DNA of 64,000 bases from the NCBI RefSeq assembly GCF_023055435.1, contig NW_025964013.1:3534001-3598000 (forward strand). Reading direction: 5' to 3'. The DNA is from Haliotis rufescens. Taxonomy: Eukaryota. Shown here one piece after another: positions 839 through 60,892 of this stretch. The translations under genes and the position numbers were made by a program. Each line of letters begins with the position of its first letter. The first letter of the stretch is position 1. The notes beneath the pieces were generated by a model. The model had not been told where the DNA came from, searched no databases, and was given only the letters and a program-made list of their open reading frames with translations.

Positions 839-3800
839 ATGGCTTCTGTGTTCGTCTCCCCTGTAAAACCTGGCAGATTTGTGTTATTGGTATTGATACT
901 GATGAACCCGAGCCACACACACAGTACTACCACCAATACTATCACAGGTGAGAAACAGTTTTCATATTGTGGGTTGTCTCGTCTTGTGTATGAATGAGCA
1001 CTTGTAGAGGTGCGGGTGCAGGTGTATTTATTAGGTTTCCTACTTAGATTTAGTACTTTGATGTGGATTTGTATTGGAGTTACATGCGATTTCGATAATT
1101 CACTCTGTTTTAAGAAAATGATTATTGAGCATGACAGTGTGTATACATATATTGTTCTAGCAGAATAATTTTCGCATCTTCAAGTGCCATTTTCTACAAT
1201 TTATGGCATGGCTACTAATGTTAGTTTATAAGTATGTTGACCCTTAATTATATAAAACATCAACGCCAGAGAATAACCAGTCTCGATTATCCGACGAAAC
1301 AGATTCCATTGTGCGTGGACGGCAAAATAGCAATGAAAAGTGTATGAGTCTCTGAAACTGTGAATAAATTAACTGAGTCATGGATATCACATAATAAAAC
1401 ATATTCAAATGTATTGGTAAAATATGTATTTCACGTAACTAAAAAGATCCCATGCATTCCTGATCCAAATCAGAATCCATTGCTACTTATAAACAGATAC
1501 TTTTCAATATAGGATATTATATAGTTTTGAATATGATCCTTGGTCTATCAGCACTATTTCCGTGATTGTCGTTATTATTTTTAAAATGTCAAAACGTCGA
1601 CGACGGTCGTCAATATGGCGCAAAATTGTGAAAAGTAGCAGCTTTTGTCATTCGCGTCATAACATGTGGTAGACTAGACGAAACTGCATATCTTTAGTAT
1701 TATATATATAAGGATGTTTGGCCCTCATTCTATGAAGGTTCATACTCCAATGAACTCATACAACTTATAAATGTTTTTCACATTTTGTTTTCCTCAAAGG
1801 ATTTAGGCCTAGATTTAAACACAATTTTATTAAGTATGTGTGACATCATGTTTACACTGACAGCCATACAACAACCAGCCGTATCGCGGAATAAAATAAT
1901 TCCTCAAAACAGAGGTGGCATAAGCGTATGTTTGCATAACTTACTCTTCAGAAACATGGATTCACATAATATCACCATTAGATAAGGAAGGTCTGTCAAA
2001 AACTACCTCAGTAAGTCAGTCACAATGACAGCGCGTTGTACGCCGACACAATACACGTGATGGGAGCGATTTCGGAAGTTCTTAATGAACATGTGGCGGT
2101 TACATGTTTCAGTCATCAGTGATCAATTGGCCGATCATTGAAGGGCGATTAAAGATGATCCAAGTATACACTAAGTTCAATTCATAGATTGCTGTGGACT
2201 GTCACTGTCAACGTGGCCACGGATTGAGTCCACTACGATAGTTTGGATGTGAATTTCCTCGTTTTGTTCACTAGCATGGGTCATAGCAAGGCTAATAGTG
2301 AACGATCATGCAGTCAAGCTCTCTGACTTTTCTCAATGTATGCTAAAACGCTGAGTTCAAGATTAAAGGTCTAAATGATCAGTGAGAACGCTTCTGTATG
2401 TATTCGTGCTAGGGAATTCCCAGGGGTTTCCCCGGGAATGTGGAAGCAGTCCGTCAGTGTTTACGTCATTTAAAAAACACGATTTAGTCCATACACTTAT
2501 GAACGCCAATTTCGCGGTCATGTGACCGACCTTACATCCTAAGGAAAAGCTATACACCATGTAAACTTCAAATTAAAAAAATATATTATATATATGTCTT
2601 ATATATTGTAGTTACAGGCACAATCGATTTCACATTACAAGGATCTTCAACAAAGACTACAAAATACACGACAAGTCCAAATTACAAAAACGGTAATACT
2701 TTCACTATCTGTTGGGAAAAATTGTGTTTTTGTCCTATTGTAAAGTTATTAGAGTGCATATTACATCTGGACATTACATCTGTAAAATATATATCAAGCA
2801 CAAAGATTTCGGATCTAACTGAGACTTTTATATGATTTTGTTATCACATATTCAAATCTTCGTGTAATATATTGATCATATACTTAAGACTGAGTTTTAT
2901 CAAGTTCAGAAAAGCTATATTTTTATTGCAGTGAACAAAACACCAGATATTTCACCGTGGTGAACACAAATGTGATATTTCACTTTTGTTTTTATTGTTA
3001 TTCTCTTGAAAATGTTTCTTTATAAACTGTATTTGTTTCATTTCACTCGTAAATCGAGACTGTTCGTTTTGCAATACGCTATTTTAGTGACTTGATCAGC
3101 GTGTATTCTTTCACTTCTAACAGCGGTTTCGTAGATTTTTAGTATAGTTTCTGTTGAAGTTTATTTTGTATATAATCATATCCAAATGCATGATAAAGAA
3201 TTGTATTGACAACAAATGTTGTTTGTAACTTTTCTTTATATTTGTTAAGATTTTGTAAACAATGAACTACTTTTTAAGTTGCAATTATGTTGTACTAATT
3301 ACATAATTGTTTCTCCTCAGACAACTTAACGTTTGAATCGTCCTGTGCTGCTCTCAATTGGTCGGCAGCGGTGACAGACTGCATCAACAAGGGAGCCGCG
3401 ATATTCTCTTTAGAAGATTTAATTACATCCATCGGCAGCCATGTGTTGAAGAAGGCTACTGCTGAACACACCAAGATATGGATAAACATAAATGGTAATG
3501 TTGTGAACCTTGATCACCCATCACTGCTTTTACTGAACCTTACTCTCCCTCACTTCAAGCTTATGACATGAGCTGCAGTTCTACAATGTTGATTGCTACC
3601 CAGACAGAACAGCGAAACAGATTGACATTCAACTGACAATGGTTAATTATTGTTGAAAACATCCAATTGTTATAAACATATATTATAATGGATGAACATC
3701 CACTGAATAATATTCTTAACCTAACAGATACCTGCTGGACAGCTGACAATTGGTCATTCCAGGTCACCAACTGTAGTGACTCCAACTATTATGTCTGCAA

Positions 3801-6800
3801 ATCGAACACAAGTACCAGTAAGTATCTATGCCAGAGTGTATCTATTGACATCATAAATACTAGTACACAGGCAAGGGCGTATGGCAGTGAGTCGATTAGT
3901 GTGCCCTTCTGTGTAAACAGCCTGCCATGGACTCAAAGTGTTCGTATAAATATACTCCAAGCTCAAATATGATGAGGATAACCTTGTCATCAACTCTCAT
4001 GTTTACGAGGGTTGGACACGATCAGTGATATATGCATCTTGTCAAATGTGAAAGATGAGACAAAAGGCACGGTTAACACATTGATATATTGACATGTTTT
4101 TCGGCTGGCGTTACGTTACACAGCTCGACTTGACTAGTTACGTATGTTAAATGGGTAACACTTCTGATGTAAGTTAATGGTACTATTTATGAGAAATAAG
4201 TTATGTGTATTTAAAACAGATTGTCGCGCTTTCTACATAATTTGTATCTTACATTGACAGGTTCTGATAGGTACGTACCTTGTCGAAAAGAAACCACAGA
4301 TGCTTCCACGCAAGGTACATATCATGTATACAATTGTAGTTCCTCCATATCCAACCGGTGTTATGTATTTTATGTAAAATGTACATTGATAGGCAGAAAC
4401 AAATATTACTTAGCGATATGTATTTTGCATTGATATACACATTAACGCCTCAATTTTCGCGAAACAGTATTTCAATCGGGTAAATAATGAAATATTCCAA
4501 GGCATGTAAGAATATATCAGTAATATATTTTTGTAAACATGGATTACCATTTACCTATTTTATCCTTGACAAGTACAAGTCTACCTATCTGTTGTACTTG
4601 AACGTTGTATCCACACAGGATCTACAACATCAACACCACAGATTCTAACCATAACCCAGGGATCAAACACAAAAGGTAATCCACATGACTGTAAAACTGT
4701 GTAATGGTACATTGTGCGCTTTATCATCGTGTAATCATAGTTTAGGTAGTGTGAATTACTGACAACATTATTTACTTAATACTTAAATTCCTTACTTATA
4801 AAATGGTAAATATGGAGCAGCAAATTTATTCACTGACATATAGTCATAGTCTCACTTGAACATATTACCATCAAGGGAATAGTCCTTCAATCACGTATAC
4901 AGTTGTTAATATCGACCTAGGGGTGGTCGAGTAACCTCGTGGTTAAAGCGTTCGCCCGTCACGTCGAAGACCCGGGTTCGATTCTAGACATGGGCACAAC
5001 GTGTGAAGCCCATTTCTGGTGTCCCCCACCGTAATGTTGCTGGAATATTGCTAAAAGCGGCGTAAAACCATACTCACTCACTAATATCAACCTGTGTGTT
5101 GTCCTCTACATAACGGGGCCACTGTTGGCCCATTTGTCTGAGACGCTGTAATTCGCTGTTGCGTCCCGTGAGCACGCCAGACGCAAATGATTGTGGGTTC
5201 GAATTCCGGTTCGCCCCGATTATCTTTTTAGGTTTGTCAGCACCATCCCCGTGCTCGTGGGTTACACCAAAGTGGTAAACGTTTGATACCTGCATCATTT
5301 GTGCTTATCTCCCACGTGAAGCTGAGACGCCCTGATGTAGCTGGAATATTGTTCAAAGCGACGTTAAACCCCTCTCACTCAGTGACTCATTCTCCATGGT
5401 GACATCTATATTGATATGCAGTAACGAAAATTAATAGGCGATAATTTGTTTCGTTTTGATAAATATACATAAACAGACATATGAACATTTACGCCTCTAT
5501 TTTCGTGAAACAATTTTCAATAACGTAAATGATTAAATACTCCAAGTCGCGAAAGAATATATCAGTAATTTATCAATCACAAACATGGATAACAAATTAC
5601 CTACTTTCTCCTGGTCAAGTACATATATACCACCTGAAGAAGGGGCAAGAAGTAGCATCGAAACGCAATATATACATGGGTAGAGATTACAGACGTTGAT
5701 ACCCAAAGCCATTGCGTCTCCTTGTACTTCAACCTATTCATGACGGTCAAGACCTTATTTTTGCCAATATAATTAAACGCACATATGACAGGACGGGTAT
5801 ATGGCAGCATATATTAGTATGTTTGTACTTGTACGTTGTAATACACACAGGATCTACACCACCGAGTCTAACCATAGGCCCTGGAGCAAACACAAACGGT
5901 ATTTTTTATGACTGTAAAAGTGTATGATTGTTCATTGTGTGTATTATCATGATTTAGTTATGCATTGATTTGGATGTTAAAATGGTATGTTGCTCACCAC
6001 ATATGCCACGCATGACCAACTCGGTGTAACAAACATAAATCTACGTGTTTACATTTGCATGTTTGACATCGTATGTATTCCGCGCTTATTATGTGAATAT
6101 GTTGAGTGAATGCCCAATATGTATGATGTATGCTGTTGAAAAGGTTTTATTTTGGACTCGTAGATTGAAAACAGTTTTCACAGCATTTTAATTTGCCTTA
6201 CGTCAGACTTAACTCCCATTCTTAATTGAAGGTAAATCGAACATGTGATAGCCTCCAATGAAGAGTTCCATTGTATCGGGAGGACTTACAGAACTACTGC
6301 AATACCAATCAGATTCTGAAAAAAAATAATATATTTTCTGTCAAGATGTCATCGATGCATGCTATCTTTAATGATATATATATATTATTCATTTCTGCTC
6401 ACAGTTCCAATCATCCCCTCGATCGTATGTACGATAGCGGTTCTTGCTGCTGTGAGCATTGTTCTTGGGTGTTACTTAATCCAAAGGTAGGAACAGTAAC
6501 TAGTATTGTTTACAATATGATGATTCGTGCAAGTTGTTCTTCCTAGTAAGTGGATGGTACAATTGTGACAAGATCGCTGTCAGACGAATTCATTATACAG
6601 TTTAATTCAAAATGTCAACGCTAGAGAATAATCAGTCTAGACTATCTACCGAAACAGTTTCCATTAAGAGTAAAAGGCAAACTTCTGATTACACTAATAT
6701 GAAAGTCAGTGATGACTGGTACATGTAGGAATGTCCTGCTCTTAGACACACTCCAATGAACAATATTAGTCAGCTAACCCAGCATGCTGTTGAGGATTCC

Positions 6801-7341
6801 GGGTTAGGAACGGTTACCCAGCAACCTGTGGCTGTTTTAAAAGGCGACTTAATTGATTGGGTTGGTCAGGCTCGGTGAGTTTGTAGAAAGTTGTTCATCG
6901 TCCCCCGACCTTTGCTCATAATATCAATCATTGGATTGNNNNNNNNNNNNNNNNNNNNNNNNNNNNNNNNNNNNNNNNNNNNNNNNNNNNNNNNNNNNNN
7001 NNNNNNNNNNNNNNNNNNNNNNNNNNNNNNNNNNNNNNNNNNNNNNNNNNNNNNNNNNNNNNNNNNNNNNNNNNNNNNNNNNNNNNNNNNNNNNNNNNNN
7101 NNNNATCTAGCCTGTCGTCATCAATTGAAAATCCATTTGACCATTGATGGACTATATTTTCAGGAGGAAAACAGGGTCATCGAGAAATCAGGTGAATGTC
7201 GCAAGTGAAGGACAACCGGAAGTGGATTATTACTGTCACCTACAAGCTCGAGATGCTTCAGAAATGAACAATTATGCTACACTTAATGAACCTGAAAACA
7301 ACGAAAGGGCACCTGCAAACCAGTCGGAACAGAATGATTAA
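839..7341 (+). CDS. CTLD receptor 1: type I TM protein (signal peptide, S/T linker, compact C-type lectin domain, S/T stalk, TM, ITAM-like tail), about 290 aa
   Basis: Nine GT-AG exons in continuous frame: 839-947 (MASVFVSPVKPGRFVLLVLILMNPSHTHS...), 2612-2692, 3321-3494 (LNWSAAVTDCINKGAAIFSLED...IWINING), 3728-3817 (TCWTADNWSFQVTNCSDSNYYVCK), 4261-4314, 4619-4675, 5851-5898, TM 6405-6486 (VPIIPSIVCTIAVLAAVSIVLGCYLIQR), tail 7164-7341. Total 873 nt. AATAAA at about 7575. The N-gap at 6939-7104 lies in the last intron. Confidence 0.85.
2412..2432. promoter_or_regulatory. Tandem NF-kB-consensus sites in intron 1
   Basis: GGGAATTCCC followed by GGGGTTTCCC. Confidence 0.35.
4920..5080 (+). mobile_element. 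SINE family 1 (tRNA-derived head, ACTC tail)
   Basis: A box GTAACCTCGTGGTTAAAGC, B box GGTTCGATTC, tail GCTGGAATATTGCTAAAAGCGGCGTAAAAC-(ACTC)n. Confidence 0.85.
5113..5390 (+). mobile_element. SINE family 2 (extended tRNA-like head)
   Basis: Matches the copies at 44761 and 57180: ...GTGGGTTCGAATTCCGGTTCGCCCCGATTAT...AAGCTGA...GTTAAACCC-(ACTC)n. Confidence 0.8.
6939..7104. other. Assembly gap
   Basis: Run of N. Confidence 0.99.
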
Positions 7342-16269: not shown

Positions 16270-16582
16270 CCTTCACTGATTATAAGCTGATTGAGGGAAC
16301 TGAACTATTTGTGTTGGAATAAGTGGCGATCATACGATGTGACATGTCATCTAACGGTGTTATATAGCTGGGGTGATGCTCATGCGTCAATACACACTCA
16401 CGTTTTCAGTGAACTGTCCCTGATCCAGGTCAGTCAAGCCGGTATACGGGTCACTCGGTACAATACGATACTTCCGTGAAATGGCGAGAGGGATATGGGT
16501 CTTAGCATTCTCTTCGAGTTATACATTAACCAAAAGACATTATCATTTCTGTATTTTCAACGAAGATCGACTAACATTAAAT

Positions 16583-19175
16583 CGTGAAGTTTAGCCAGTG
16601 AAATATGATACTTTTTGTATGGTAAAAAGAAACACCGATTACTGATCCAGGGGGAGGTAACTCTTGTCAACCTTCTGCGAACATTAGTCAGTATTGTTCA
16701 CTAAGCAGGAAATATTTTTGTTTCAAAAACATCTCTCGATCTGTAATGAAATCAGTTATGAATCCACGTTACTAAGTAGGGAAAGATCGCAACTTGAGAG
16801 GGACACATATGGATGACAAGTTACCAACAAACCGACAAGACAGAAGGGGGTCCGGCCATGTTTGAGAACTAAAACATGGTGAACATTAGCATGTATTATT
16901 TTATTTTTTTTCTCATTTCATTTATTTAAAGAGCAAACCTCGACGTGTTCCAGTCTGTTTTACCATGAAATATACACATTCATGTAAATATATGAAGTAA
17001 TCAACGCCAGAGAATAACTATTCTCGATCGGCAGAACAGAATGGCTTGCCATTGGGCGTAAACAAAAATAGCGGTAAAAGTAAACTACTTCACTCTGCCG
17101 AATGTTAAGCTGCGTTGTATAATATTGCATTGATGCATTATCCGTTTATGTTTTCGGACAAATGTATGCAAACATCATCCAACCATAAATATTGACATAT
17201 TAATGATGTGTTTAGTATTACAATAGTACCATGAAATTGTGTAAACACGTGTATACAGTTGACACTGCAACATTTACCTCGAATAAATTATCTGCTTGCT
17301 ATCAAATACAAGAGGACATGTTGTTTCCTCATAGATAAGGGACTTTTCTAAGATAAGGGACCTTTCTTCACTTGTACTACGCTAGCCTGCGCTATCAGCT
17401 GGGATGTTTATTGTCATAGCCAGTCAAGAACTGGTATTGGCAACGAAGCAGGAAACTGAGTCACATTATCTGTACGGTACACGTGAGTGTGGAGTGTCAG
17501 TATTTACACAGCGTCGCGTATGAAGGATGGCTTCTGTATTTGTCTCCCCTGTAAAACCTGGTTGCTTTGTGTTAATGGTATTGATACTGATGAACCCGAG
17601 ATACACACACAGTACGACCAGCAATACTACCACAGGTGAGAAACAGTTTTCATATTGTGGGTTATCCCGTCTTGTGTATGAATGAGCACTTGTATAGGTG
17701 CGGGTGCAGGTGTATTTATTAGATTTCCTACTTAGATTTTGTACTCTGATGTGGATTATTTGTATTGGAGTTACATGCGATTTCAATAATTCACTCTGTT
17801 TCAAGAAAATGATTATTGAGCATGACAGTGTGTATACATATATTGTTCTGTCAAACTCGATATATCAGAATAATTATCGCATCTTTAAGTGCCATTTTCT
17901 ATTAAACCGTGAAGTTTAGCCAGTGAAATATGATACTATTTGTATGGTAAAAATAAACACTGATTACTCATCCAGGGGGAGGTAACTCTTGTCACCCTTC
18001 TGCAAACATTAGTCAGTATTGTTCACCAAGCAGGAATATTTAGTTTCAAAAATTTCTCTCGATCTGTAATGAAATCAGTTATGAATCCACGTTACTAAGT
18101 AGGGAAAGATCGCAACTTGATAGGGACACATATGGATGACAAGTTACCAACAAACCGACAAGACAGGAGGGGGTCCGGCCATGTTTGAGAACTAAAACAT
18201 GGTGAACATTAGCATGTATTATTTTAGTTTTTTTTCTCATTTCATTTATTTAAAGAGCAAACCTCGACATTTTCCAGTCTGTTTTATCATGAAATATACA
18301 CATTCATGTAAATATATGAAGTAATCAACGCCAGAGAATAACTATTCTCGATAGGCCGAACAGAATGGCTTGCCATTGGGCGTAAACACAAAATAGCGGT
18401 AAAAGTAAACTACTTCACTCTGCCGAATGTTAAGCTGCGTTGTATAATATTGCATTGATGCATTATCCGTTTATGTGTTCGGACAAATGTATGCAAACAT
18501 CATCCAACCATAAATATTGACATATTTATGATGTGTTTAGTATTACAATAGTACCATGAAAATGTGTAAACACGTGTATACAGTTTACACTGCAACATTT
18601 ACCTCGAATAAATTATCTGCTTGCTATCAAATACAAGAGGACATGTTGTTTCCTCATAGATAAGGGACTTTTCTAAGATAAGGGACCTTTCTTCACTTGT
18701 ACTACGCTTGCCTGCGCTATCAGCTGGGATGTTTATTGTCATAGCCAGTCATGAACTGGTATCAGTAACGAAGCAGGAAACTGAGTCACATTATCTCTAC
18801 GGTACACGTGAGTGTGGTGTCAGTATTTACACAGCGTCGCGTATGAAGGATGGCTTCTGTGTTCATCTCCCCTGTAAAACCTGGTAGCTTTGTGTTATTG
18901 GTACTGATACTGATGAACCCGAGCCACACACACAGTACTACCAGCAATACTACCACAGGTGAGAAACAGTTTTCATATTGTGGGTTATCTCGTCTTGTGT
19001 ATGAATGAGCACTTGTATAGGTGCGAGTGCAGGTGTATTTATTAGGTTTCCTACATAGAGTTTGTACTTTGATGTGGATTATTTGTATTGGAGTTACATG
19101 CGATTTCGATAATTCACTCTGTTTTAAGAAAATGATTATTGAGCATGACAGTGTGTATACATATATTGTTCTATC
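16583..19175 (+). repeat. Tandem duplication (about 1.32-kb unit) of promoter plus exon 1
   Basis: CGTGAAGTTTAGCCAGTGAAATATGATACT starts both units (about 16583 and 17908). Both units contain exon 1. Confidence 0.9.
17527..17635 (+). CDS. Duplicated signal-peptide exon 1 (alternative first exon of CTLD receptor 2)
   Basis: MASVFVSPVKPGCFVLMVLILMNPRYTHSTTSNTTT followed by a gtgag donor. Intact 109-nt phase-1 exon inside an approximately 1.3-kb tandem duplication. Confidence 0.65.
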
Positions 19176-22100
19176 AGAATAATTTTCGCATCTTCAAGTG
19201 CCATTTTCTACAATTTCTAGGCATGGCTAATAGTGTTAGTTTATAAGTGTGTTGACCCTTAACTATATAAAACGTCAACGCCAGAGAATAACCAGTCTCG
19301 ATTATCCGACGAAACAGATTCCATTGTGCGTGAACGGCAAAATAGCAATAAAAAGTGTATGAGTCTCTGAAACTGTGAATAAATTAACTGAGTCATGGAT
19401 TTGACATAATAAAACATGTTCAAATGTATTGGTAAAATATGTTTTTCACGTAACTAAAAAGATCCAATGCTATAAATGCTCGATGTAAAGAGTCACAACT
19501 CGCTGTGATTTGCATTCCTTATCCAAATCAGAATTCATTGCTACTTATAAACAGATTCTTTTCAATATAGGACATTATATAGTTTTGAATATGATCCCTG
19601 GTCCATCAGCACTATTCCCGTGATTGTGGTTATTATTTTTAAAATGTCAAAACGTCGATTACGGTTGTCAATATGGCGCAAAATTGTGAAAAGTAGCAGC
19701 TTTTGTCATTAGCGTCATTACAAGTGGTAGACTAGACAAACTGCATATCTTTAGTAAATTAAGGATGTTTGGCTCTCATTCTATGAAGGTTCATACTCTA
19801 ATAAACTCATACAACTTTTAAATGTTTTTCACATTTTGTTTACCTCAAAGGATTTAGGCCTAGATTTAAACACAAGTTTATTAAGTACGTGTGACATCAT
19901 GTTTACACTGACAGCCATACAACAACCAGCTGTATCGCGGAATAAAATAGTTCCTCAAAACAGAGGTGGCATGAGCGTATGTTTGCAGAACGTACTCTTC
20001 AGAAACATCTGACACAACACATGTATTCAAATAATATCACCATTAGATAAGGAAGGTCTCTCAAAATCTCCCTCAGTAAGTCAGTCACAATGACAGCGCG
20101 TCCTGAGCCGACACAATACACGTGATGGGAGCGATTTCGAAAGTCTAATGAACATGTGGCGGTTACATGTTTCAGTCATCATTGATCAATTGGCCGTTCA
20201 TTGAAGGGCGATTAAAGATGATCCAAATATACACTGAGTTCACTTCATAGATTACTGTGGACTGTCACTGTCAGCGTGGCCACGGATTGAGTCCATACTA
20301 CGATAGTTTGGATGTGCATTTCTTCGTTTTGCTCACTAGCATGGGTCATAGCAAGGCTAATAGTGAACGATCATGCAGTCAAGCTCTCTGACTTTTCTCA
20401 ATGGATGATAAAACTCTGAGTTCAAGATTAAAGGTCTAAATGATCAGTGAGAACGCTTCTGTATGTATTCGTGCTAGGGAAAACCCTGGGAATATGGAAG
20501 CAGTCCGTCAGTGTTTACGTCATTTCAAAAACACGGTCTTGTCCATACTCTTATGAACGTCAATTTCGCGATCATGTGACCGACTTATCATCCAATGTAA
20601 AAGCCGTATATGATGTAAACTTCAAATTAAAAAATATATATATGATATATATGTGTGATATATTGTAGTTACAGGCACAATCGATTTCACATTACAGGAT
20701 CTTCAACAAAGATTACAAAATACACGGCGACAAGTCCAAATTACAAAAACGGTAATACTTTCACTATCTGTTGTGAAAACAAATGTGTTATTGTCCTATT
20801 GTAAAGTTTTTAGAGTGCATATTACATCTGGACATTATTATTGTTATTCTCTTGAAAATGTTTCTTTACGAACTGTATTTGTTTCATTTCCTATGCAATT
20901 TTTGACCGAGTTATATAAGTATTTCATTTTATTAAATAGAATGAGTGAGTGAGTTGGGTTTAACGCCGTTTTTAACAGTATTCCAGTTAAATCGCGGCGT
21001 GTCAGATCAATGTGGGAGGAAAGCCCGGAGTGATATTTATTCCATTTTATTAAATAGATCCCATGCAATGTGTAGGTATATATGTAATCCATTTTATAAA
21101 ATAGATCCCATGCAATATGTGACCGAGGTATATATGTAATCCATTTTATTAAATAGATCCCATGCAATATGTGCCCCAGGTATATATGTATTCCGTTTTA
21201 TTAAATAGATCCCATGCAATATGTGACCCAGGTATATATGTATTCCATTTTATTAAATAGATACCATGCAATATGTGACCGAGGTATATATATATTCCAT
21301 TTTATTAAATAGATCCGATGCAATATGTGACCGAGGTATATATGTATTCCATTTTATTAAATAGATCCCATGCAATATATGACCGAGGTATATATGTATT
21401 CCATTTTATTAAATAGATCCGATGCAATATGTGACCGAGGTATATATGTATTCCATTTTATTAAATAGATCCCATGCAATATGTGACCGAGGTACGTAGG
21501 ACCAAGGAATACTCCTGAATATGACCCATATTTCGTCAGCACTATTCCCCTGCTTGTGGGCTGCAAAAATGTCAAAACGTCAACGACCGTCATATTTTTT
21601 TAACCTCTCCTCATAATTAAGCTTAATCCCTGTGACATAACTGATTAACACAATCAAATCACTGTTTAAGCTAAAGCGCTTACTCACTCACTATTTGACT
21701 CAGTCTATCCTGTTTTGATTAAGGTATGAATTATTTGTTGAACTAATGATATAATTGTTTCTCCTCAGACAACTTAACGTTTGAATCTTCCTGTGTTGCT
21801 CTCAATTGGTCGGCAGCGGTGACAAACTGCATCGACAACGATGCCGAGATATTCTCTGTAGAAGATTTAATTACATCCATCGGCAGCAATGTGTTGAAGA
21901 ATGCTACTGCTGAACACACCAAGATATGGATAAACATAAATGGTAATGTTGTGAACCTTGATCACCCGCCACTGCTTTTACTGAACCTTACTCTCCCTCA
22001 CTTCAAGCTTGTGACATGAGCTACAGTTCTACAATGTTGATTGCTACCCAGACAGAACAGCGAAACAGATTGACATTCAACTGACAATGGTTAATTATTG

Positions 22101-24529
22101 TTGAAAACATCCAATTGTTATAAACAGATATTACAATGGATGAACATCCACTGAATAATATTCTTAACCTAACAGATACCTGCTGGACATCTTTCAATGG
22201 GTCATTCGAGGGCGCCAACTGTAGTGACTCCAACTATTATGTCTGCACATCGAACACAAGTACCAGTAAGTATCTATGCCAGAGTGTATCTGTTGACATC
22301 ATAAATACTAGTACACAGGCAAGGGCGTATGGCAGTGAGTCGATTAGTGTACCCTTCTGAGTAAACAGCCTGCCATGGTCTCAAAGTGTTCGTATGAATA
22401 TACTCCAAGCTCAAATATGATGAGGATAACCTTGTCATCAACTCTCATGTTTACGAGGGTTGGACACGATCAGTGATATATGCATCTTGTCAAATGTGAA
22501 AGATGAGACAAAAGGCACGGTTTACACATTGATATATTGACATGTTTTGCGGCTGGCGTTACGTTACACAGCTCGACTTGACTAGTTACGTATGTAAAAT
22601 GGGTAACACTTCTGATGTAAGTTAATGGTACTATTTATGAGAAATAAGATATGTGTATTTAAAACAGATTTTCGCGCTTTCTACATAATTTGTATCTTAC
22701 ATTGACAGGTTCTGATTGGTACGTACCTTGTCGAAATGAAACCACGGATGCTTCCACGCAAGGTACATATCATGTATACAATTGTAGTTCCTCCATATCC
22801 AACCGGTGTTATGTCTTTTATGTAAAATGTACATTGATCGGCAGAAACGAATATTACTTGGCGATATGTGTTTTGTATTTATATACACATTAACGCCTCA
22901 ATGTTCGTGAAATAGTATTCAATCGGGTAAATGCTGAAATATGCCAAGGCATGTTAGAATATATCAGTAACATATTTTTGTAAACATGGATTACCATTTA
23001 CCTATTTTATCCTTGACAAGTACAAGTCTACATATCTGTTGATGCACGGCCGTGTACAGCTATAGAGACATACAATAAAGATATCTCACCTTTTGTATTC
23101 TTTAAACACAACTATCGATGGTATATTCTTGCCCTTCACACTCCTAGTGGGGGCACGGGTGGCCTAGTCTAAGGCACCGCAATTCGCTCTGCAATGTTGC
23201 GTCCCTTGGGCACTCCAGAAACTGATGATCGTAGGTTCGATTATGTTTCTATGTTTGTGAGCATTATACATGTGCTCGTGGGTTACACCTAAATGGTGAA
23301 CGTCTTAGACCTGGAACTCTTCGGGCTTTCTTCCGACATGAAGCTTATACACCGTGACGTTAAACCAATCTCTCACTCACACTTTCCCCTAATGAAAGCG
23401 CGAGAAGTAGCCTCGGAACGTCATATTTAGAGATTTGAGAGCTGATGTCCATAAATCTTGTATCTCGTTTATGTATCTTGACCTTGTTCATGTTTCTATA
23501 GTAACGCACATGCGTGGCAGTGTATATAGTTGTACTTGAACGTTGTATCCACACAGGATCTACAACATCAACACCACAGATTCAAACCACAACCCAGGGA
23601 TCAAACACAAAAGGTAACCCACATGACTGTAAAACTGAGTAATGGTACATTGCGCGCTTTATCATCGTGTAATCATAGTTTAGGTTGTGTGAATTACTGA
23701 CAACAGTATTTAATTAATGATTATGAACAATCATTACATGTTTTATTACATTTCTATGAAATTACTTATTAATAAAATAGTAAATATAGAGTAGCAAATT
23801 TATTCATATAGTCATATTCTTGTTTTACATAAAGACGTTGGTTGACGTTTAATAATAGTTTCACATGAACATAACCATGCATGTTTATATGTGTTCTCAG
23901 TTCTAATCATCGCTTCTGTGGTATGTGTGATAGTGGCTCTTGTTGCTGTGGTCATAATCTCAGGCTGTTATATCATTAAACGGTGAGATTTTTATTTTAA
24001 TCTAATCAAATGACCTATAATTATGTTAAAAATAGCGAGTATCGATCCGAAAAAAACGTCATCATCTCATTCACCCAAAACCCTCACCCCATCAGGTCAT
24101 TCCTATTCTCTCTATCTTCCCAGCTCTGTATATTATAGAAGGTTTGTTTCTGTATTCAGCAACAAGAAACCAATCAAGTACGCAGTGAGAACTGAGAGTG
24201 TTATGTATCACAGACAGCACCCGGATCCTGGTATAGTAGAAGAACCGCAGCTGGCAGATGTGCAGCTGGTATGTCCTACAGAAGCTGACGGTGGAAACAG
24301 TGGCATGAGTGAAAGGCAGGACGGTGAATATGACATTCTGTGTCGACCAGTGGGCAATGGAGGTAAAGTTGTCCCGTCAGACAGCACGGCCGTGTACAGC
24401 CATCTGTGTGCATCTAACGCAGCAGCTGGACCCCAGGAAGAAAACAATTATGACACCACCACGCTGCCACAGTATGACAGGAGGCCTGTTGACAGGATAT
24501 ATGACAGAATACATGTGCCTGACAATTAA
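18850..24529 (+). CDS. CTLD receptor 2 (paralog of receptor 1) with a longer multi-tyrosine tail; about 311 aa if the frameshifted exon 2 is skipped
   Basis: Exons 18850-18958 (alternative copy at 17527-17635), [20669-20751, 83 nt, frameshifted], 21769-21942, 22176-22265, 22709-22762, 23557-23613, TM 23901-23982 (VLIIASVVCVIVALVAVVIISGCYIIKR), tail 24160-24529 (YDIL, YSHL, YDTT, YDRI). AATAAA at about 24738. Confidence 0.8.
21030..21495. repeat. 52-bp minisatellite, about 9 copies
   Basis: Unit ATATATGTATTCCATTTTATTAAATAGATCCCATGCAATATGTGACCGAGGT. Absent from the paralogous intron of receptor 1. Confidence 0.9.
23149..23380 (+). mobile_element. SINE family 2, diverged
   Basis: GGGGGCACGGGTGGCCTAGTC head. 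Confidence 0.75.
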
Positions 24530-25125
24530 ATATACTCATATGTAGTAACGAAGGATATAAAAATCCCTGTTAGTGGTGGCAATAGATGAGTGCTTCTTTG
24601 TTCAGTTGATCATTGGTTATTGTATTTATTGGTAGCGCAATGATTGCGATACTGCCGACGTATTAGCTATACCTGTAACACTTTCGCCATACATCGTCAG
24701 TTTAGCAGTATGTCTGTTTCATGTATTTTCGACTGAAAATAAAACTTCCTCTCAATAGTATGACGGATTTAAACGATTATGTTTATGTCTATTAAAACAC
24801 AATAGAGCTAGGAAGTAGGAAATAATTTCTGATTGTTTTTCTTCCACGAACATGCTCTGATGTACATAGGATTACAATATACTTTCATATATGACATGCA
24901 AAATAGGTTTTAATAGGTTATCTGTGACTTCGTTGTAGATGTCAGTTCACAAATCACAAGACAAATGCAACATAAATGTTTCTGATATATTCATACACCC
25001 TTCCCTAAAAAATAGTAAGAGTTTTTGTTACTCTTGAAAATGTACTGATAATCATTGAGGAAGCTATGGTGTGCGAACACTTAACCAGTGCTGACAGCGC
25101 GATATATCCACAAACACATACAGAC

Positions 25126-58100: not shown

Positions 58101-60892
58101 CATATTTCCATAATTAGGTTTGAATGACTACACCTTAATAATCCAGGAATCGGGAGTTTGCTTTGTAGACAGATTAAATATTTATTGAACGCTTGCCATG
58201 TAGGATCAGTATATGTTTAAAAAAAGATGGCAAAACCCTTTCCACAACAAAGCAGAATCCATTGACAGAAGGTTACTACTTCCCAAGCGTGTGTCTATGA
58301 GTCTCCACCAAATAGTGATCGCCAAAAGTTAAACTTATTCCGTCCAACCAGGAAAAAATAAGAGGCTAGGAAAAGATATATGCAGTGATTCACTTTAACC
58401 AAGGTGGCCATAATTACTCATCAATATCATTAAGTCATTAAGTTGTGATCATATGGAAGTGACATTAAACCCCTTTCTTATAATTGCGTTTTACATATCT
58501 TTAGAAATCCCACCGTCCAGCTTCGATCTGTCTTCGACCAAGGCGAATATGTCAGTGGCAGAGCGAGATTGTCTGACCAGGAACGGCAGTATGGTACACC
58601 TTACAAACCTCAGTAGGTCATCACTTCAAACAGCCTTCTTGGAAGTAACGAATAGGTTCGGCAAGGCAGTATGGCTTGGCTACAATGACACCGAAATCCA
58701 AGGTAAAGAGGGAACTGTATGTGTGAGAATGTGTAGTGTNNNNNNNNNNNNNNNNNNNNNNNNNNNNNNNNNNNNNNNNNNNNNNNNNNNNNNNNNNNNN
58801 NNNNNNNNNNNNNNNNNNNNNNNNNNNNNNNNNNNNNNNNNNNNNNNNNNNNNNNNNNNNNNNNNNNNNNNNNNNNNNNNNNNNNNNNNNNNNNNNNNNN
58901 NNNNNNNNNNNNNNNNNNNNNNNNNNNNNNNNNNNNNNNNNNNNNNNNNNCACGTGTCGCCTGGGATTAGATACTAAAGAGGGATAAAGTGAGTACTTTT
59001 GAGTTAAATACTGGCAACACTTTGATAAATATTATATTTGTTCGTTGTTTAACACCGCGATCAGCAATATTCCTGCCATGTGATGGCGGTTTGTTAATAA
59101 TCGACCAGATAATACAGTGACTGATATCATGAGCACCGATCCATCCACGCAACTGGGATACGACGACATGCATCCACCAAGTCAGCGAGCCTGACCACCC
59201 GATCACGTTAGTCGCCTCTTACGACAAGCATGGGTTGCTGAAGACCAATTCTACCCCGGATCTTCACAAGTCCTATGATAAATATGCCTATATCAGTAAC
59301 TAATGCTATCGAGTGAATAAAATCCGTCACATTCAAGTGTTAAAAACTGAAAGTACTTTAACTATACTCAAATGCTCCTTTTACACAACACAACAGCAGG
59401 CAACTGCAACGTCCTGTACCCCAAAACGCCAGGCGCTGCCAGAATAAAGACATCCTCCTGTGACGAGCTGCATCACTACATATGCTTCCAGAGCACGGTC
59501 GACAGTGGTAAGTGTTTCTGAAACTTCTGGGGCGGTGGGGTAGCCGAGTGGTTAAGGTACATGGGTACAATGTGTGAAGCCCATGTCTAGTGTCCACCGC
59601 CGTGATGTTGCTGGAATATTGCTAAAAGCGGCGTAAAACCATACTCCCTCTGAAACTACTGTTTTACCACGAAAATATACACAAACACATAATCTATCGA
59701 TAACGGGTACATGGCGTCTTTTAAGTTATTGTTACTACACTGCTGATATTAATTATGTTTCAATGAACGCAATAATGAACCGGACTACTTGTTATACGTT
59801 AGTGTCAATTCCACGTAAAGTAGATTTTCATATTTCAAAATTCAAAAAATATTTTTTTTAAATCGGATAGTGAGTCAACGGTTTCCAACACGGGACAGAT
59901 GACGCAAATTGCCGACATGATTGAAACTGAAACAATACTCGTCTACACTTAGCTCGTGTTTTAGGTGAACTCTCGTTGACGATAAACTGTCTGTTCATTC
60001 CCGACAGACATGAAATAGGTTTAAACAAAAAACAAATATTAAGGGGTTTAAGTGATGATTAATCAAACCGCCTTAAGACAATGAAGTTATCTTAAAATCC
60101 AGGCGCAAATATTATCTCATTTTTGAAAGGTGAGTATTCCGTCCATAAAGAATGCAAATGAAACAAAATGAAAGATGAAAAATGTTATATTTCAAAAGCC
60201 ACTTCACAAAATAGGCATTGGTCGTATTATTTTATCAAATTTGACCGATTCAGACCCAAAACCTGGCAGAGCCCACTTGACCGGAAGCGTTATGTCCCTT
60301 CGTAAAACGTAAGGTGCTTGCTGTGAAATGCTTTATTTTATCGACTTTCTGTGCACCAAGTACACCGGTCAATAAGTGTGCACCGTTTGTTATACTATTG
60401 CATACAATTTAATGTTTCTCCCGAAGTAGTTGTATTGTCAGGAACGATCGGGAACAGGCTAGTGATAATTAATGTTGCCTTTGGACCATATATTACATCC
60501 GACTGATTTTTGCTAATTAATGCTGCGTTGTGCATGTCTCTCGAGTAACCATATATACGTATTCCGTGATGGATGTAGTTATATATACGTATCGTACGTA
60601 CCTGAATGCAAGTAGATGACAAGACAGGCACATGGTTGACAATAGTTGTCATCAGCCTAATTGACTCCTTATTTGCCTCATTTGAATACACACACATGCA
60701 GGGAAAATAATATGTTTATGTTTATTCCTGTGTTTGATAATAGTTGTCATCAGCCTTCCTGGGTCTTAACCTGCCTCATTCAAATATACTCATACATGAA
60801 TGTAACAGACGTATGTTTAAATCTATCCCTGTGTTCGTTATTCCATACAGGGAGCGACATGACGACCAGCGCTACATCGCCTGCAAATTTCT
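55190..60892 (+). CDS. CTLD receptor 3 (divergent; 3' part beyond the window)
   Basis: Exons 55190-55265 (MTSVSIALFVCVLILWVAMVMMTKT), 58505-58702 (NMSVAERDCLTRNGSMVHL...VWLGYND), 59397-59507 (NCNVLY...SSCDELHHYICFQ), 60851-60892 (S/T stalk). All are phase 1, with the CTLD split as in receptors 1 and 2. Confidence 0.75.
55718..56332. mobile_element. Tc1/mariner-like non-autonomous element
   Basis: TACTACTCAAAA...TTTTGAGTAGTA termini and an internal inverted repeat GTGGCACCCGATTCTTTCATATT. Confidence 0.5.
56134..56295 (-). mobile_element. SINE family 1 nested in a Tc1-like MITE
   Basis: Reverse-complement copy with TSD GTAATATGAAA. Confidence 0.88.
56331..56512. mobile_element. pogo/Tigger-like MITE (second copy)
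   Basis: TACAGTAAACTACG...CGTAGTTTACTGTA terminal inverted repeats. Confidence 0.8.
57180..57458 (+). mobile_element. SINE family 2, full length
   Basis: Head through ACTC tail. Flanking repeat TGAATGTACA. Confidence 0.88.
58740..58950. other. Assembly gap
   Basis: Run of N. Confidence 0.99.
59035..59268 (-). mobile_element. SINE family 3
   Basis: Reverse complement (TTAGTCGCCTCTTACGACAAGCATGGG). Confidence 0.85.
59529..59648 (+). mobile_element. SINE family 1, internally deleted
   Basis: Head and tail of the consensus present. Flanking repeat TCTGAAACT. Confidence 0.75.

What the first reader, a model, noticed from the sequence alone, without database searches (positions are those of the whole stretch)
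21769..22265. Strong excess of amino-acid-changing differences confined to the CTLD exons
Manual comparison with 3321-3494 and 3728-3817 gives about 19 nucleotide differences in 264 coding nt, changing 16 codons, with only one purely synonymous codon (TCG/TCT). The 233-nt intron between these exons has only about 6 differences. Changes cluster in DCINKGAA to NCIDNDAE and TADNWSFQVT to TSFNGSFEGA, while all Cys and the WIN motif are kept. Exons diverging faster than introns is the classic sign of diversifying selection on a ligand-binding surface.
Basis: seen in the sequence. Interest (0 to 1): 0.78.

Follow-up and report, generated by a model that had tools for sequence, protein, structure and literature searches.

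The report
Fast-evolving abalone lectin-like receptor paralogs
Two neighbouring copies of an abalone-only membrane receptor gene differ mainly by amino-acid-changing mutations in their lectin-like outer domain, which hints at selection for new binding specificities but does not prove it.

Summary
The counts are right: 19 differences in 264 exon bases (11+8), 16 codons changed, one purely silent codon, 6 differences in the 233-base intron. The window is red abalone (Haliotis rufescens). The exons belong to two tandem genes, here called A and B, of a family found only in Haliotis. These are type I membrane proteins with a compact C-type-lectin-like domain that lacks the long loop. Gene B is transcribed and spliced exactly at the stated borders.

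The excess is real but moderate, not "strong". For A against B, dN/dS is about 3.2, with only 1.5 silent changes (P=0.26). Replacement-site divergence is 2.0-2.5 times the non-coding divergence (P=0.002-0.014). Site models on 5-6 paralogs give P=0.016-0.065. Branch models give omega about 3.8 in the young clade against 0.38 in the background, but omega above 1 depends on the tree (P=0.03 or 0.22).

The changes are not "confined" to the lectin exons: signal, stalk and membrane exons also change, at omega about 0.9. The same positions vary again in other abalone genes (P=3e-4). Genealogies conflict along the locus, so gene conversion is active and weakens the tests.

Verdict: probable, unproven diversifying selection in an uncharacterised receptor cluster.

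The parts
21769..21942 (+). Gene B (NCBI LOC124136739), CTLD exon 1; in-frame codons 21771-21941
   Evidence: Open frame. Matches P0035 residues 38-94. RNA-like contigs of runs X1 and X2 cover it with 0-1 other letters and join 21942 to 22176.
21943..22175 (+). Phase-1 intron of gene B between the two CTLD exons (233 nt, GT..AG)
   Evidence: A joint that skips 233 bases with GT..AG ends appears in one contig each of X1 and X2. It has 6 differences from the A intron.
22176..22265 (+). Gene B, CTLD exon 2; in-frame codons 22178-22264
   Evidence: contigs with 0 other letters; joint 22265 to 22709.
3321..3494 (+). Gene A (no protein on record in the collections searched), CTLD exon 1
   Evidence: Open frame. 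94% DNA identity to B exon 1. Flanked by AG and GT.
3495..3727 (+). Intron of gene A between the CTLD exons
3728..3817 (+). Gene A, CTLD exon 2
   Evidence: 91% identity to B exon 2.
18850..18958 (+). Gene B signal-peptide exon
   Evidence: tblastn of P0035 residues 1-28 at 100% identity; ATG and GT donor read.
20698..20751 (+). Gene B optional 54-nt Ser/Thr-rich mini exon
   Evidence: The loose end of the X1 and X2 contigs before 21768 equals window 20722-20751. Homologous to the extra exon of P0040.
22709..22762 (+). Gene B stalk exon 1
   Evidence: Joints 22265|22709 and 22762|23557 with GT..AG ends in X1 and X2. Sequence read.
23557..23613 (+). Gene B stalk exon 2 (Thr-rich)
23901..23982 (+). 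Gene B transmembrane exon
   Evidence: Joints 23613|23901 and 23982|24160 with GT..AG ends.
24160..24529 (+). Gene B long cytoplasmic tail exon with stop codon
   Evidence: tblastn of P0035 residues 190-311 at 100% identity, 24161-24526. Covered by RNA-like contigs.
839..947 (+). Gene A signal-peptide exon
2642..2692 (+). Gene A homologue of the mini exon (51 nt, open, AG/GT kept)
   Evidence: Read directly. Its use is not shown.
4261..4314 (+). Gene A stalk exon 1 (Trp to Arg and Asn to Lys relative to the other three genes)
4619..4675 (+). Gene A stalk exon 2
6405..6486 (+). Gene A transmembrane exon
7164..7341 (+). Gene A short cytoplasmic tail exon with two YxxL motifs 10 residues apart, and the stop codon
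1..4780 (+). Segment of unit A that is duplicated in unit B at 18016-23718. Three collinear blocks: 1-2776, 3283-4594, 4591-4780. About 4.3-4.9% mismatch.

Best explanation
The two exon pairs encode the extracellular domain of two neighbouring, intact genes (A and B). They belong to a young tandem array found only in abalone. The proteins are type I membrane glycoproteins: signal peptide, an optional Ser/Thr mini exon, one compact C-type-lectin-like domain of about 87 residues with no long loop, a Thr-rich stalk, one membrane helix, and a tyrosine-motif tail. The tail is short in A and long in B.

Shown here:
- The genes are real, and B is expressed and spliced as stated.
- The fold is a CTLD.
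- The array has at least 12 members on this contig, four of them very close (A', B', A, B).
- In that young clade the CTLD takes amino-acid changes about twice as fast as aligned non-coding DNA changes.
- The changes fall on a recurrent subset of positions, while the cysteines and core stay fixed.

Inferred: after the duplications, selection favoured new surface residues. These lie at the end of helix 1 and the following loop, along helix 2, and on the beta3-beta4 hairpin, and include a gained N-glycosylation sequon in B and B'. This gave A-type and B-type binding surfaces. Gene conversion kept homogenising silent and intronic sites, so the type-defining differences survive almost only at replacement sites. 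The ligand, and whether the role is immune or something else, is unknown.
For: Identity and reality:
- The window is G000 contig C235, 6,194,048 bases. That is the contig length on record for the H. rufescens proteins P0001 and P0002.
- Gene B equals NCBI protein P0035. A' equals P0038 and B' equals P0040.
- All 7 exons of A read open.
- X1 and X2 contigs cover only the exons of B and carry 5 GT..AG joints at the predicted borders, with 0-1 other letters in the CTLD exons.

Family:
- 25 proteins at E<=1e-3 among 1.84 billion representatives. All 10 looked up are Haliotis proteins.
- 10 of 10 hits of a second search are also Haliotis.

Fold:
- AF2 pLDDT is 83-94 over residues 39-125.
- The Foldseek top rows are CTLDs, E from 3e-4.
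- The 50 VIA rows listed are CTLD proteins or complexes that hold one, Z 7.9-10.1, rmsd about 2 A over 79-96 residues.

Rates, A against B:
- Replacement sites 17.5/204, against 35/1005 local non-coding (P=0.002-0.004), 109/2309 upstream block (P=0.02-0.03) and 144/3314 all non-coding (P=0.008-0.014).

Rates across the four genes:
- Variable replacement columns 35/204 against non-coding 341/3424, P=0.002.
- The A,A'|B,B' pattern is seen at 8 of 204 replacement sites and 0 of about 54 silent sites. In non-coding DNA it is 1 of 1006 locally and 24 of 2418 upstream, so 25/3424 in all (P=3.6e-4).

Codon models (my own GY94 code; the lnL was reproduced by IQ-TREE):
- Foreground omega 3.8 against background 0.38, P=2e-4. 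Foreground above 1, P=0.03.
- M7/M8 P=0.016 (6 taxa) and 0.042 (5 taxa), with 17-20% of sites at omega 3-3.9.

Site pattern:
- 12 of the 16 columns that vary in three independent contrasts also vary among the four genes, P=3e-4. The contrasts are the two H. cracherodii genes, the gene C orthologues, and the two H. rubra proteins.
- Only 4 of 24 family-conserved columns vary (P=0.025), and 2 of those 4 vary only in B'.

Other lines:
- B against the H. cracherodii long-tail protein differs at 18/87 residues in the CTLD and 8/122 in the tail. The neighbouring gene C differs at only 5/87 between the same species.
- There is no possible donor copy for the B-only changes.
Against: - Replacement against silent comparisons are not significant: A-B P=0.26. 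The chance of at most 1 silent among 19 is 0.07, and of at most 2 is 0.21.
- Four-gene M0 omega 1.63 does not differ from 1 (P=0.22), and M2a on four genes gives P=0.18. Six-taxon M1a/M2a gives P=0.065. Five-taxon M0 omega is 0.99.
- On the alternative tree ((A,A'),(B,B')) the foreground omega is 1.6, P=0.22.
- Silent columns vary at 8/54, not below the replacement rate of 35/204 when A' is included. A-A' omega is 0.6.
- Other exons show omega about 0.9, so the whole ectodomain is weakly constrained.
- An independent young pair of the family (L013/L014) has about 5-6 replacement and 3-4 silent changes in exon 1. Its exon divergence is 4.9% against about 4.4% for the locus, so there is no excess there (my reading of the list).
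- Genealogies conflict. Eight exon sites group A with B and B'. Three exon-2 sites group A with A'. The upstream block switches from A,B|A',B' to A,A'|B,B' (P=0.003). Recombination of this kind inflates site-model tests (recalled from the literature, not read here).
- The foreground branches and this gene pair were chosen after seeing the data.
Confidence: 0.5

Rival explanations
1. Relaxed constraint plus chance. After recent tandem duplication the copies drift almost neutrally (omega about 1). Surface positions of a small disulfide-held domain tolerate any residue, so the same tolerant sites change repeatedly. The apparent omega above 1 comes from sampling about 54 silent sites and from picking this pair after seeing the data.
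For: - M0 omega is 0.99 (5 taxa) and 1.63 (4 taxa, not different from 1).
- Signal, stalk and membrane exons have pN about equal to pS.
- B' has lost the Trp of the W-I-N motif and an Asp that is nearly invariant in the family.
- No replacement-against-silent test is significant.
- L013/L014 show no excess.
Against: - Replacement sites diverge 1.7-2.5 times faster than 1000-3400 aligned non-coding sites (P=0.002-0.03). Neutrality does not predict this.
- M7/M8 gives P=0.016 and 0.042.
- The foreground omega of 3.8 beats omega=1 at P=0.03 and 0.018 on the best tree.
- Family-conserved columns are spared in A, A' and B.
- B is expressed with an unchanged CTLD in two further samples.
- The tail stays constrained, pN 0.015-0.036.
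Confidence: 0.28
2. A gene-conversion mosaic without selection. The exon differences are older divergence, or imported patches, that happen to have escaped the conversion tracts which homogenised the intron and flanks. On this view 'exon faster than intron' reflects different coalescence times, not different rates.
For: - Genealogies differ between adjacent segments.
- The local non-coding DNA carries almost no A,A'|B,B' signal (1/1006), while the upstream block carries 24/2418.
- A' has locally raised divergence at silent sites (5/54) and in the intron (14/233) as well as at replacement sites. An imported or older tract would give that.
- Differences come in tight clusters of 6-7 changes in 14-25 nt.
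Against: - Escaped old tracts should keep old silent differences too. The 8 type-defining sites are all replacement sites and 0 of about 54 silent sites show that pattern. Silent and replacement sites with other patterns lie between them, so many micro-tracts ending exactly at replacement sites would be needed.
- The assembly holds only 5 DNA copies, and none carries the B-only states.
- A-B silent divergence (0.028) equals the intron divergence (0.026).
Confidence: 0.15
3. Part of the four-copy structure is an assembly artefact. The units [A',B'] and [A,B] would be two divergent haplotypes laid in tandem, so A/A' and B/B' would be alleles, not paralogs.
For: - H. cracherodii has only two annotated genes of this subgroup, one short-tail and one long-tail.
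- Unit-wide collinearity at 88-97% identity.
- No protein for A is on record.
Against: - B' has a short tail and B a long one, so the units differ in structure.
- 4-6% non-coding divergence, with many indels.
- A against B, the pair in the finding, lie 18 kb apart in one contig with different 3' halves, and are paralogs under either view.
- Copy depth was not tested.
Confidence: 0.07

Closest known systems
Vertebrate NK-complex C-type-lectin-like receptors (Ly49/KLRA, NKR-P1/Clr, CD94/NKG2, CD69, LLT1)
   Same: CTLD fold without calcium-dependent sugar binding. LLT1, NKR-P1B, CD69, CD94-NKG2A, Ly49L and NKG2D are among the structural matches. They form tandem gene clusters whose members have near-identical ectodomains but different signalling tails. 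Fast replacement change with gene conversion is their textbook behaviour (recalled, not read here).
   Different: The vertebrate receptors are type II proteins with the N terminus inside the cell, and they keep a long loop region. The abalone proteins are type I, with a signal peptide and the C terminus inside, and have only 2 residues between beta2 and beta3. No sequence-level relation beyond the superfamily: Pfam Lectin_C scores 14.5-17.5 bits, below the cut-off of 22.6.
Clusters of polymorphic single-pass transmembrane genes in the snail Biomphalaria (PTC1/GRC, PTC2, LG5R)
   Same: Molluscan genomic clusters of signal-peptide plus single-membrane-helix genes. [quoted passage not shown]
   Different: Their ectodomain types differ; the LG5R genes are scavenger-receptor-like according to those passages. 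The evidence there is allelic polymorphism and association with resistance. Here it is paralog divergence only, with no phenotype.
Compact CTLDs without the long loop region (Link/Xlink module and similar)
   Same: Size of about 87-90 residues, with the same beta-alpha-alpha-beta core and no long loop. The best hit of the family profile outside Haliotis is a four-Xlink protein, P0017 (E=2.4e-7).
   Different: Pfam Xlink does not match the abalone proteins at E<=1 (0 of 8 scanned), and no Link module appears among the 50 VIA rows. The compact/canonical classification is recalled from the CTLD literature, not read here.
Abalone sperm lysin and egg VERL
   Same: Same genus, and the classic case of replacement changes outrunning silent ones (recalled, not read here).
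   Different: Unrelated folds and a known gamete-recognition role. Nothing here links the CTLD receptors to fertilisation.

Membership tests
[quoted passage not shown] | Sequence match to Pfam Lectin_C (PF00059) at or above the gathering score | tested here: not met
   Exon 1 peptides score 14.5 bits. The full proteins P0035, P0038 and P0004 score 15.9, 17.5 and 14.8 bits against a cut-off of 22.6, and only profile positions 2-48 of 107 match. 4 of 8 family proteins give no Lectin_C row at all.
[quoted passage not shown] | CTLD fold (beta1-alpha1-alpha2-beta2-beta3-beta4-beta5) superposable on solved CTLDs | tested here: met
   The AF2 model of P0035 has pLDDT 83-94 over residues 39-125 with that order of elements. 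Foldseek gives 18 matches at E<=1e-3, and the rows shown are CTLDs. VIA-align gives Z 7.9-10.1 and rmsd 1.8-4.0 A over 79-96 residues, and all 50 rows are CTLD proteins or complexes holding one, by their titles.
[quoted passage not shown] | Conserved cysteine framework and the Trp-containing beta2 motif | tested here: inconclusive
   C45, C57, C97, C110, C118, C132 and W90-I91 are invariant or nearly so in 21 family proteins. The disulfide pairing was not tested, and the mapping onto the canonical C1-C4 / C2-C3 pairs rests on recall.
True C-type lectins (calcium-dependent carbohydrate-recognition domains) | Long loop region carrying the EPN/QPD and WND calcium and sugar ligands | tested here: not met
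   Only 2 residues separate beta2 (88-93) from beta3 (96-101) in the model. About 85 model residues align across 110-125-residue spans of the targets. No such motifs appear in the alignment. The motif names are recalled.
Link module (Pfam Xlink) | Match to PF00193 | tested here: not met
   No Xlink row at E<=1 for any of the 8 family proteins scanned. Only distant profile hits such as P0017 carry it.
Genes under positive (diversifying) selection | omega significantly above 1 in a likelihood-ratio test that is robust to tree and recombination | tested here: inconclusive
   M7/M8 P=0.016 and 0.042. M1a/M2a P=0.065 and 0.045. Four genes alone are not significant. The branch test gives P=0.03 on the best tree and 0.22 on the alternative. 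No recombination-aware test was run.
Genes under positive (diversifying) selection | Replacement rate above a neutral non-coding yardstick | tested here: met
   A-B: 17.5/204 against 144/3314, ratio 1.97, P=0.008-0.014. Four genes: 35/204 against 341/3424, P=0.002. Caveat: conversion may have lowered the yardstick.
ITAM-bearing activating receptors | YxxL/I, then 6-8 residues, then YxxL/I in the cytoplasmic tail | tested here: not met
   The tail of A, A' and B' has two YxxL motifs separated by 10 residues (read). B's long tail has YxxL motifs about 19 residues apart. The consensus spacing is recalled.

The most novel reading that the evidence does not exclude
The array could be a molluscan counterpart of the vertebrate NK-receptor complex. 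It would be a lineage-restricted cluster of paired receptors with near-identical compact CTLD ectodomains on different tyrosine-motif tails (short in A, A' and B'; long in B). Selection would hold distinct A-type and B-type recognition surfaces against ongoing gene conversion, tracking a fast-changing partner such as a pathogen or a self marker. All ectodomain introns are phase 1. The H. rubra models P0037 and P0006 share exon 1 but differ from exon 2 onward. Combinatorial splicing across neighbouring copies could therefore add further diversity.
Probability: 0.2. Interest if true: 0.75.

Novelty: new member of a known kind. Interest (0 to 1): 0.45.

Why it matters
Abalone are farmed and endangered animals hit by infectious disease, and their recognition receptors are almost unknown. 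This work defines an uncharacterised family restricted to Haliotis: single-pass receptors with a minimal CTLD, arranged in a tandem array. It shows that the youngest members change their outer domain faster than neutral DNA at a recurrent set of positions.

If selection is confirmed, the family gives candidate loci for resistance mapping. It would also be a second molluscan example, beside the Biomphalaria transmembrane clusters, of cluster-based receptor diversification without adaptive immunity.

The case is also a caution. A pairwise exon-against-intron contrast in a tandem array overstates the signal when gene conversion is active.

Tried and rejected
Pseudogene decay of A or B was considered and not supported. 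All exons of A and B read open, the family-conserved columns are intact in both, and B is transcribed. B' does carry two hits on conserved columns, but NCBI models it as coding, and H. cracherodii proteins share its Cys-Gln variant.

Import from a third paralog was looked for with DNA searches of the whole assembly, one for each B exon. Each found 5 of 5 matches that are the known copies, and none carries the B-only states.

A canonical sugar-binding lectin was rejected, because there is no long loop.

I therefore used proteins of other Haliotis species and the contigs of four runs.

The list of differences for the runs of organism E was cut (75 rows not shown), so no exon-against-intron count could be made from it. 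Only 3 listed exon substitutions and one in-frame deletion/insertion pair could be read, and all change the amino acid.

Mapping variable sites in 3D was not possible because the tools return no coordinates. I give secondary-structure positions only. The 3-4-residue spacing on helix 2 is suggestive, but the helix is kinked at residue 72 and one recurrent site (83) falls on the other side.

Expression of gene A was not tested, because the single read-laying run went to gene B.

The ESM Atlas gave only weak Lectin_C leads, scores 0.82-0.85, below the level the tool calls reliable.

Literature: three full-text searches listed no paper on this abalone family. I saw only the listings and starts of abstracts. 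Of PMC13712769 I saw nine passages. Supplementary files were not consulted, and none bears on a claim made here.

Earlier notes of the scan: by place, 5 notes on this window, none on this point. By words, nothing relevant.

Full report
OBSERVATION

A global alignment of 3200-4700 with 21646-23150 lists 11 substitutions in 3321-3494 and 8 in 3728-3817, which is 19 of 264. It lists 6 in the 233-nt intron and about 30 in the 773 aligned bases downstream to 4590.

The open frame starts at the third base of each exon, and all flanking introns are phase 1. Sixteen of 86 full codons differ. The Nei-Gojobori count is 1.5 silent differences on 54 silent sites and 17.5 replacement differences on 204 replacement sites.

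WHAT THE LOCUS IS

The window is contig C235, 3,534,001-3,598,000, of a 1.33-Gb assembly. A profile of 12 exon-1 peptides found only 25 proteins at E<=1e-3 among 1.84 billion cluster representatives. The 10 I looked up are all "uncharacterized protein" records of Haliotis rufescens, H. cracherodii, H. rubra and H. asinina. The H. rufescens records sit on a contig of 6,194,048 bases, which is the length of C235. So the window is red abalone.

A second search, with the neighbouring gene's protein, returned 10 of 10 Haliotis proteins. One is P0035 (LOC124136739, 311 aa), whose CTLD is letter for letter copy B. P0038 and P0040 are two further copies that lie upstream of the window; I call them A' and B'. 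Copy A has no protein on record in these collections, but each of its seven exons reads open with AG/GT borders.

The exon-1 peptide has 15 matches in the genome. Twelve are in one head-to-tail array on C235 and three are on C594. At DNA level only five copies are close: B, B' (97%/92% identity for exon 1/exon 2), A (94%/91%), A' (88%/89%) and gene C (80%/79%).

The A and B units share three collinear blocks: 1-2776 with 18016-20837, 3283-4594 with 21729-23041, and 4591-4780 with 23529-23718. Beyond these, B has a different 3' half. A is collinear with A' and B' along its whole length.

EXPRESSION AND SPLICING

One read-laying run placed contigs of four public runs on 21500-24600.

Runs X1 and X2 are from one study and their kind is only guessed as RNA. 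They cover the exons and leave the introns empty. They carry GT..AG joints at 21942|22176, 22265|22709, 22762|23557, 23613|23901 and 23982|24160. Their loose end before 21768 equals the 54-nt mini exon at 20698-20751. The CTLD exons show 0-1 other letters.

Runs X15 and X16 (organism E) cover introns as well. One 1228-nt contig (21595-22823) has 54 other letters and 3 gaps, and carries the upstream flank typical of B. The exon differences that were listed are 21796, 22208, 22212 and an in-frame deletion/insertion pair at 21839/21842. All of them change the amino acid, and the first three return B to the state of A or B'. Seventy-five rows were not shown, so no rate can be taken from this.

FOLD

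Pfam sees only a sub-threshold Lectin_C match to the first half of the profile. Six of the 8 weak far hits of the family profile that I scanned are multi-domain Lectin_C or Xlink proteins, matched at the start of those domains.

An AF2 model of P0035, built with 21 family sequences, is confident only for residues 39-125 (pLDDT 83-94). The elements are beta1 39-43, alpha1 50-59, alpha2 67-86 (kinked at 72), beta2 88-93, beta3 96-101, beta4 104-107 and beta5 117-121.

The Foldseek top rows are CTLDs: DC-SIGNR, NKR-P1B, CD69, LOX-1, MBP-C and langerin. The search that does not lean on Foldseek gives Z 7.9-10.1 over about 85 residues for 50 CTLD entries.

Only two residues link beta2 to beta3. The long loop that binds calcium and sugar in true lectins is therefore absent. 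This is a compact CTLD on a type I protein.

IS THE EXCESS MORE THAN CHANCE?

For the pair A-B, omega is about 3.2, but replacement against silent sites gives P=0.26. Using non-coding DNA as the yardstick gives more power:

| Comparison | Counts | Result |
|---|---|---|
| Replacement sites | 17.5/204 = 0.086 | |
| Local intron plus downstream | 35/1005 | ratio 2.5, P=0.002-0.004 |
| Upstream block without the signal exon | 109/2309 | ratio 1.8, P=0.02-0.03 |
| All non-coding | 144/3314 | ratio 2.0, P=0.008-0.014 |

The intron alone (6/233) is not unusually conserved relative to the rest.

Other pairs: B-B' omega 3.6, A-B' 2.1, A'-B 1.2, A'-B' 1.0, A-A' 0.6.

NOT CONFINED TO THE CTLD EXONS

Between A and B the signal and stalk exons have pN 0.050 and pS 0.057. 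Among A, A' and B' the membrane exon has pN 0.065-0.081. Only the tail is held, at pN 0.015-0.036.

Between species, B differs from the H. cracherodii long-tail protein at 18/87 CTLD residues, 3/37 signal, 2/19 stalk, 3/28 membrane and 8/122 tail. Gene C differs at 5/87 CTLD residues between the same two species. So the CTLD of the A/B clade is the fastest part of the protein and is faster than its neighbour's CTLD, but it is not the only part that changes.

CODON MODELS

I wrote a GY94 F3x4 likelihood. Its M0 lnL (-993.213) equals IQ-TREE's on the same data and tree.

| Data set | M0 omega | M1a/M2a | M7/M8 |
|---|---|---|---|
| 6 paralogs | 0.55 (below 1, P=0.003) | P=0.065 | P=0.016; 17% of sites at omega 3.0 |
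| 5 paralogs | 0.99 | P=0.045 | P=0.042 |
| 4 genes | 1.63 (P=0.22) | P=0.18 | not run |

A two-ratio branch model puts omega 3.8 on the branches A, B, B' and the B/B' stem, against 0.38 elsewhere (P=2e-4 against one ratio). Foreground above 1 has P=0.03, or 0.018 when A' is added. On the tree ((A,A'),(B,B')), which is worse by 12 lnL units, the foreground omega is 1.6 and P=0.22.

The foreground branches were chosen after seeing the data.

SITE PATTERNS AND HISTORY

Among the four genes:

| Pattern A,A' against B,B' | Count |
|---|---|
| Replacement sites | 8 of 204 |
| Silent sites | 0 of about 54 |
| Intron sites | 1 of 233 |
| Downstream sites | 0 of 773 |
| Upstream block | 24 of 2418 |

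Against all non-coding DNA (25/3424) this gives P=3.6e-4. Against only the nearest 1042 upstream sites (18) it gives P=0.058.

Polarised by gene C, all 5 B-only and all 8 B'-only exon changes are derived: 5:0 and 7:1, replacement to silent. Eight of the 16 A'-only states are ancestral, so A, B and B' share 8 derived states (5 replacement, 3 silent). Three exon-2 sites instead group A with A'. The upstream block switches from A,B|A',B' in its first 500 bases (7 against 1) to A,A'|B,B' further on (8 against 23; P=0.003).

The history is therefore reticulate. Gene conversion or unequal exchange acts in the array. The simplest reading is that silent and intronic sites are being homogenised while type-defining replacement sites persist or arise quickly. 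Both processes need selection at those sites. The reticulation also means that the P values of the site-model tests are optimistic.

WHERE THE CHANGES LIE

In P0035 numbering, the A-B differences fall as follows:

| Residues | Element |
|---|---|
| 46 | after beta1 |
| 56, 59 | end of alpha1 |
| 60, 61, 63 | the following loop and short strand |
| 67, 77, 81 | alpha2 |
| 100, 101 | end of beta3 |
| 103 | the turn |
| 106, 107 | beta4 |
| 108 | after beta4 |
| 119 | beta5 |

Lys to Asn at residue 81 creates an N-A-T sequon in B and B'.

Sites with posterior above 0.8 under M8 are 67, 71, 74, 77 and 83 on alpha2, and 98, 101, 103 and 107 on the hairpin.

Thirty of 87 columns vary among the four genes. 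Twelve of the 16 columns that vary in three independent contrasts in other genes and species are among those thirty (odds ratio 8.8, P=3e-4). Only 4 of the 24 columns conserved in ten distant paralogs vary (P=0.025), and two of those vary only in B'.

This is the pattern of a fixed scaffold with a recurrently changing surface. On its own it does not separate tolerance from selection.

EVIDENCE AGAINST A GENERAL FAMILY PROPERTY

The young pair L013/L014 is 92.8% identical over 3.1 kb. Exon 1 has 9 differences in about 185 nt, of which about 5-6 are replacements and 3-4 silent by my reading. The locus as a whole has about 137 substitutions in about 3100 aligned bases. There is no excess there, although two of the replacements sit at the start of alpha2.

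COMPARISON AND VERDICT

The closest functional picture is the vertebrate NK-complex CTLD receptor cluster. Within molluscs it is the Biomphalaria clusters of polymorphic single-pass membrane genes (passages of PMC13712769). Three full-text searches listed no paper on this abalone family.

It is overstated in strength and in the word "confined". I rate it a new member of a known kind, of moderate interest.

The joined spliced model was never sent to a search tool. Exons were searched apart, and full-length analyses used NCBI's own proteins.

Noticed in passing
window 20889-21494: A 52-bp minisatellite of about 12 units lies in the intron upstream of B's CTLD exon 1. This stretch (about 20837-21729) has no counterpart in A (2776-3283). 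In the last 38 bases before the exon, A groups with A' and B with B'.
   Followed up: partly
window 16576-19210, and 17527-17637: The 1.3-kb 5' region is tandemly duplicated. A second, open copy of the signal-peptide exon lies 1.3 kb upstream of B's annotated first exon. A' has the same arrangement upstream of the window. This could be an alternative first exon, or a relic.
   Followed up: no
window 23042-23528: B carries about 487 bases that A lacks (blocks 3283-4594 and 4591-4780 abut in A). A contig of run X15 (organism E) also skips 23022 to 23529. Depth at 23164-23267 is about 2000-fold in X15 and X16, and the stretch matches five other places in the window. This looks like a repeat-element insertion specific to this B copy.
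   Followed up: partly
proteins P0037 and P0006 (H. rubra LOC124257045, isoforms X2 and X7): The two NCBI isoforms are identical through CTLD exon 1 and differ from CTLD exon 2 onward, including the stalk, membrane helix and tail type. The gene model seems to splice exon 1 of one copy to the later exons of another copy. All ectodomain introns are phase 1, so such cross-copy splicing would stay in frame.
   Followed up: no
window 23607-23899: Besides the GT..AG joint 23613|23901, contigs of X1 and X2 show a second joint, 23607 to 23899, with four other letters in between. It could be an allele with a small change at the end of stalk exon 2, or a contig from copy B'.
   Followed up: no
window 7164-7341 against 24160-24529: A, A' and B' end in a short tail with two YxxL motifs 10 residues apart. 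B, and one gene each in H. cracherodii, H. rubra and H. asinina, end in a long tail with several Tyr motifs. This is a paired-receptor-like arrangement of similar ectodomains on different tails.
   Followed up: partly
L013 and L014 (C235:3408175-3411321 and 3394882-3398028): A second young pair of the same family, 92.8% identical over 3.1 kb. It has no replacement excess in exon 1, but two replacements sit at the start of helix 2.
   Followed up: partly
window 6939-7104 and 58740-58950: Two runs of N. The first lies in the intron between gene A's membrane and tail exons. They were left as they are.
   Followed up: no
window 4263-4313: Gene A alone has Arg in place of the Trp of the stalk motif next to the sixth conserved cysteine. 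H. rubra P0006 shows the same Arg.
   Followed up: no
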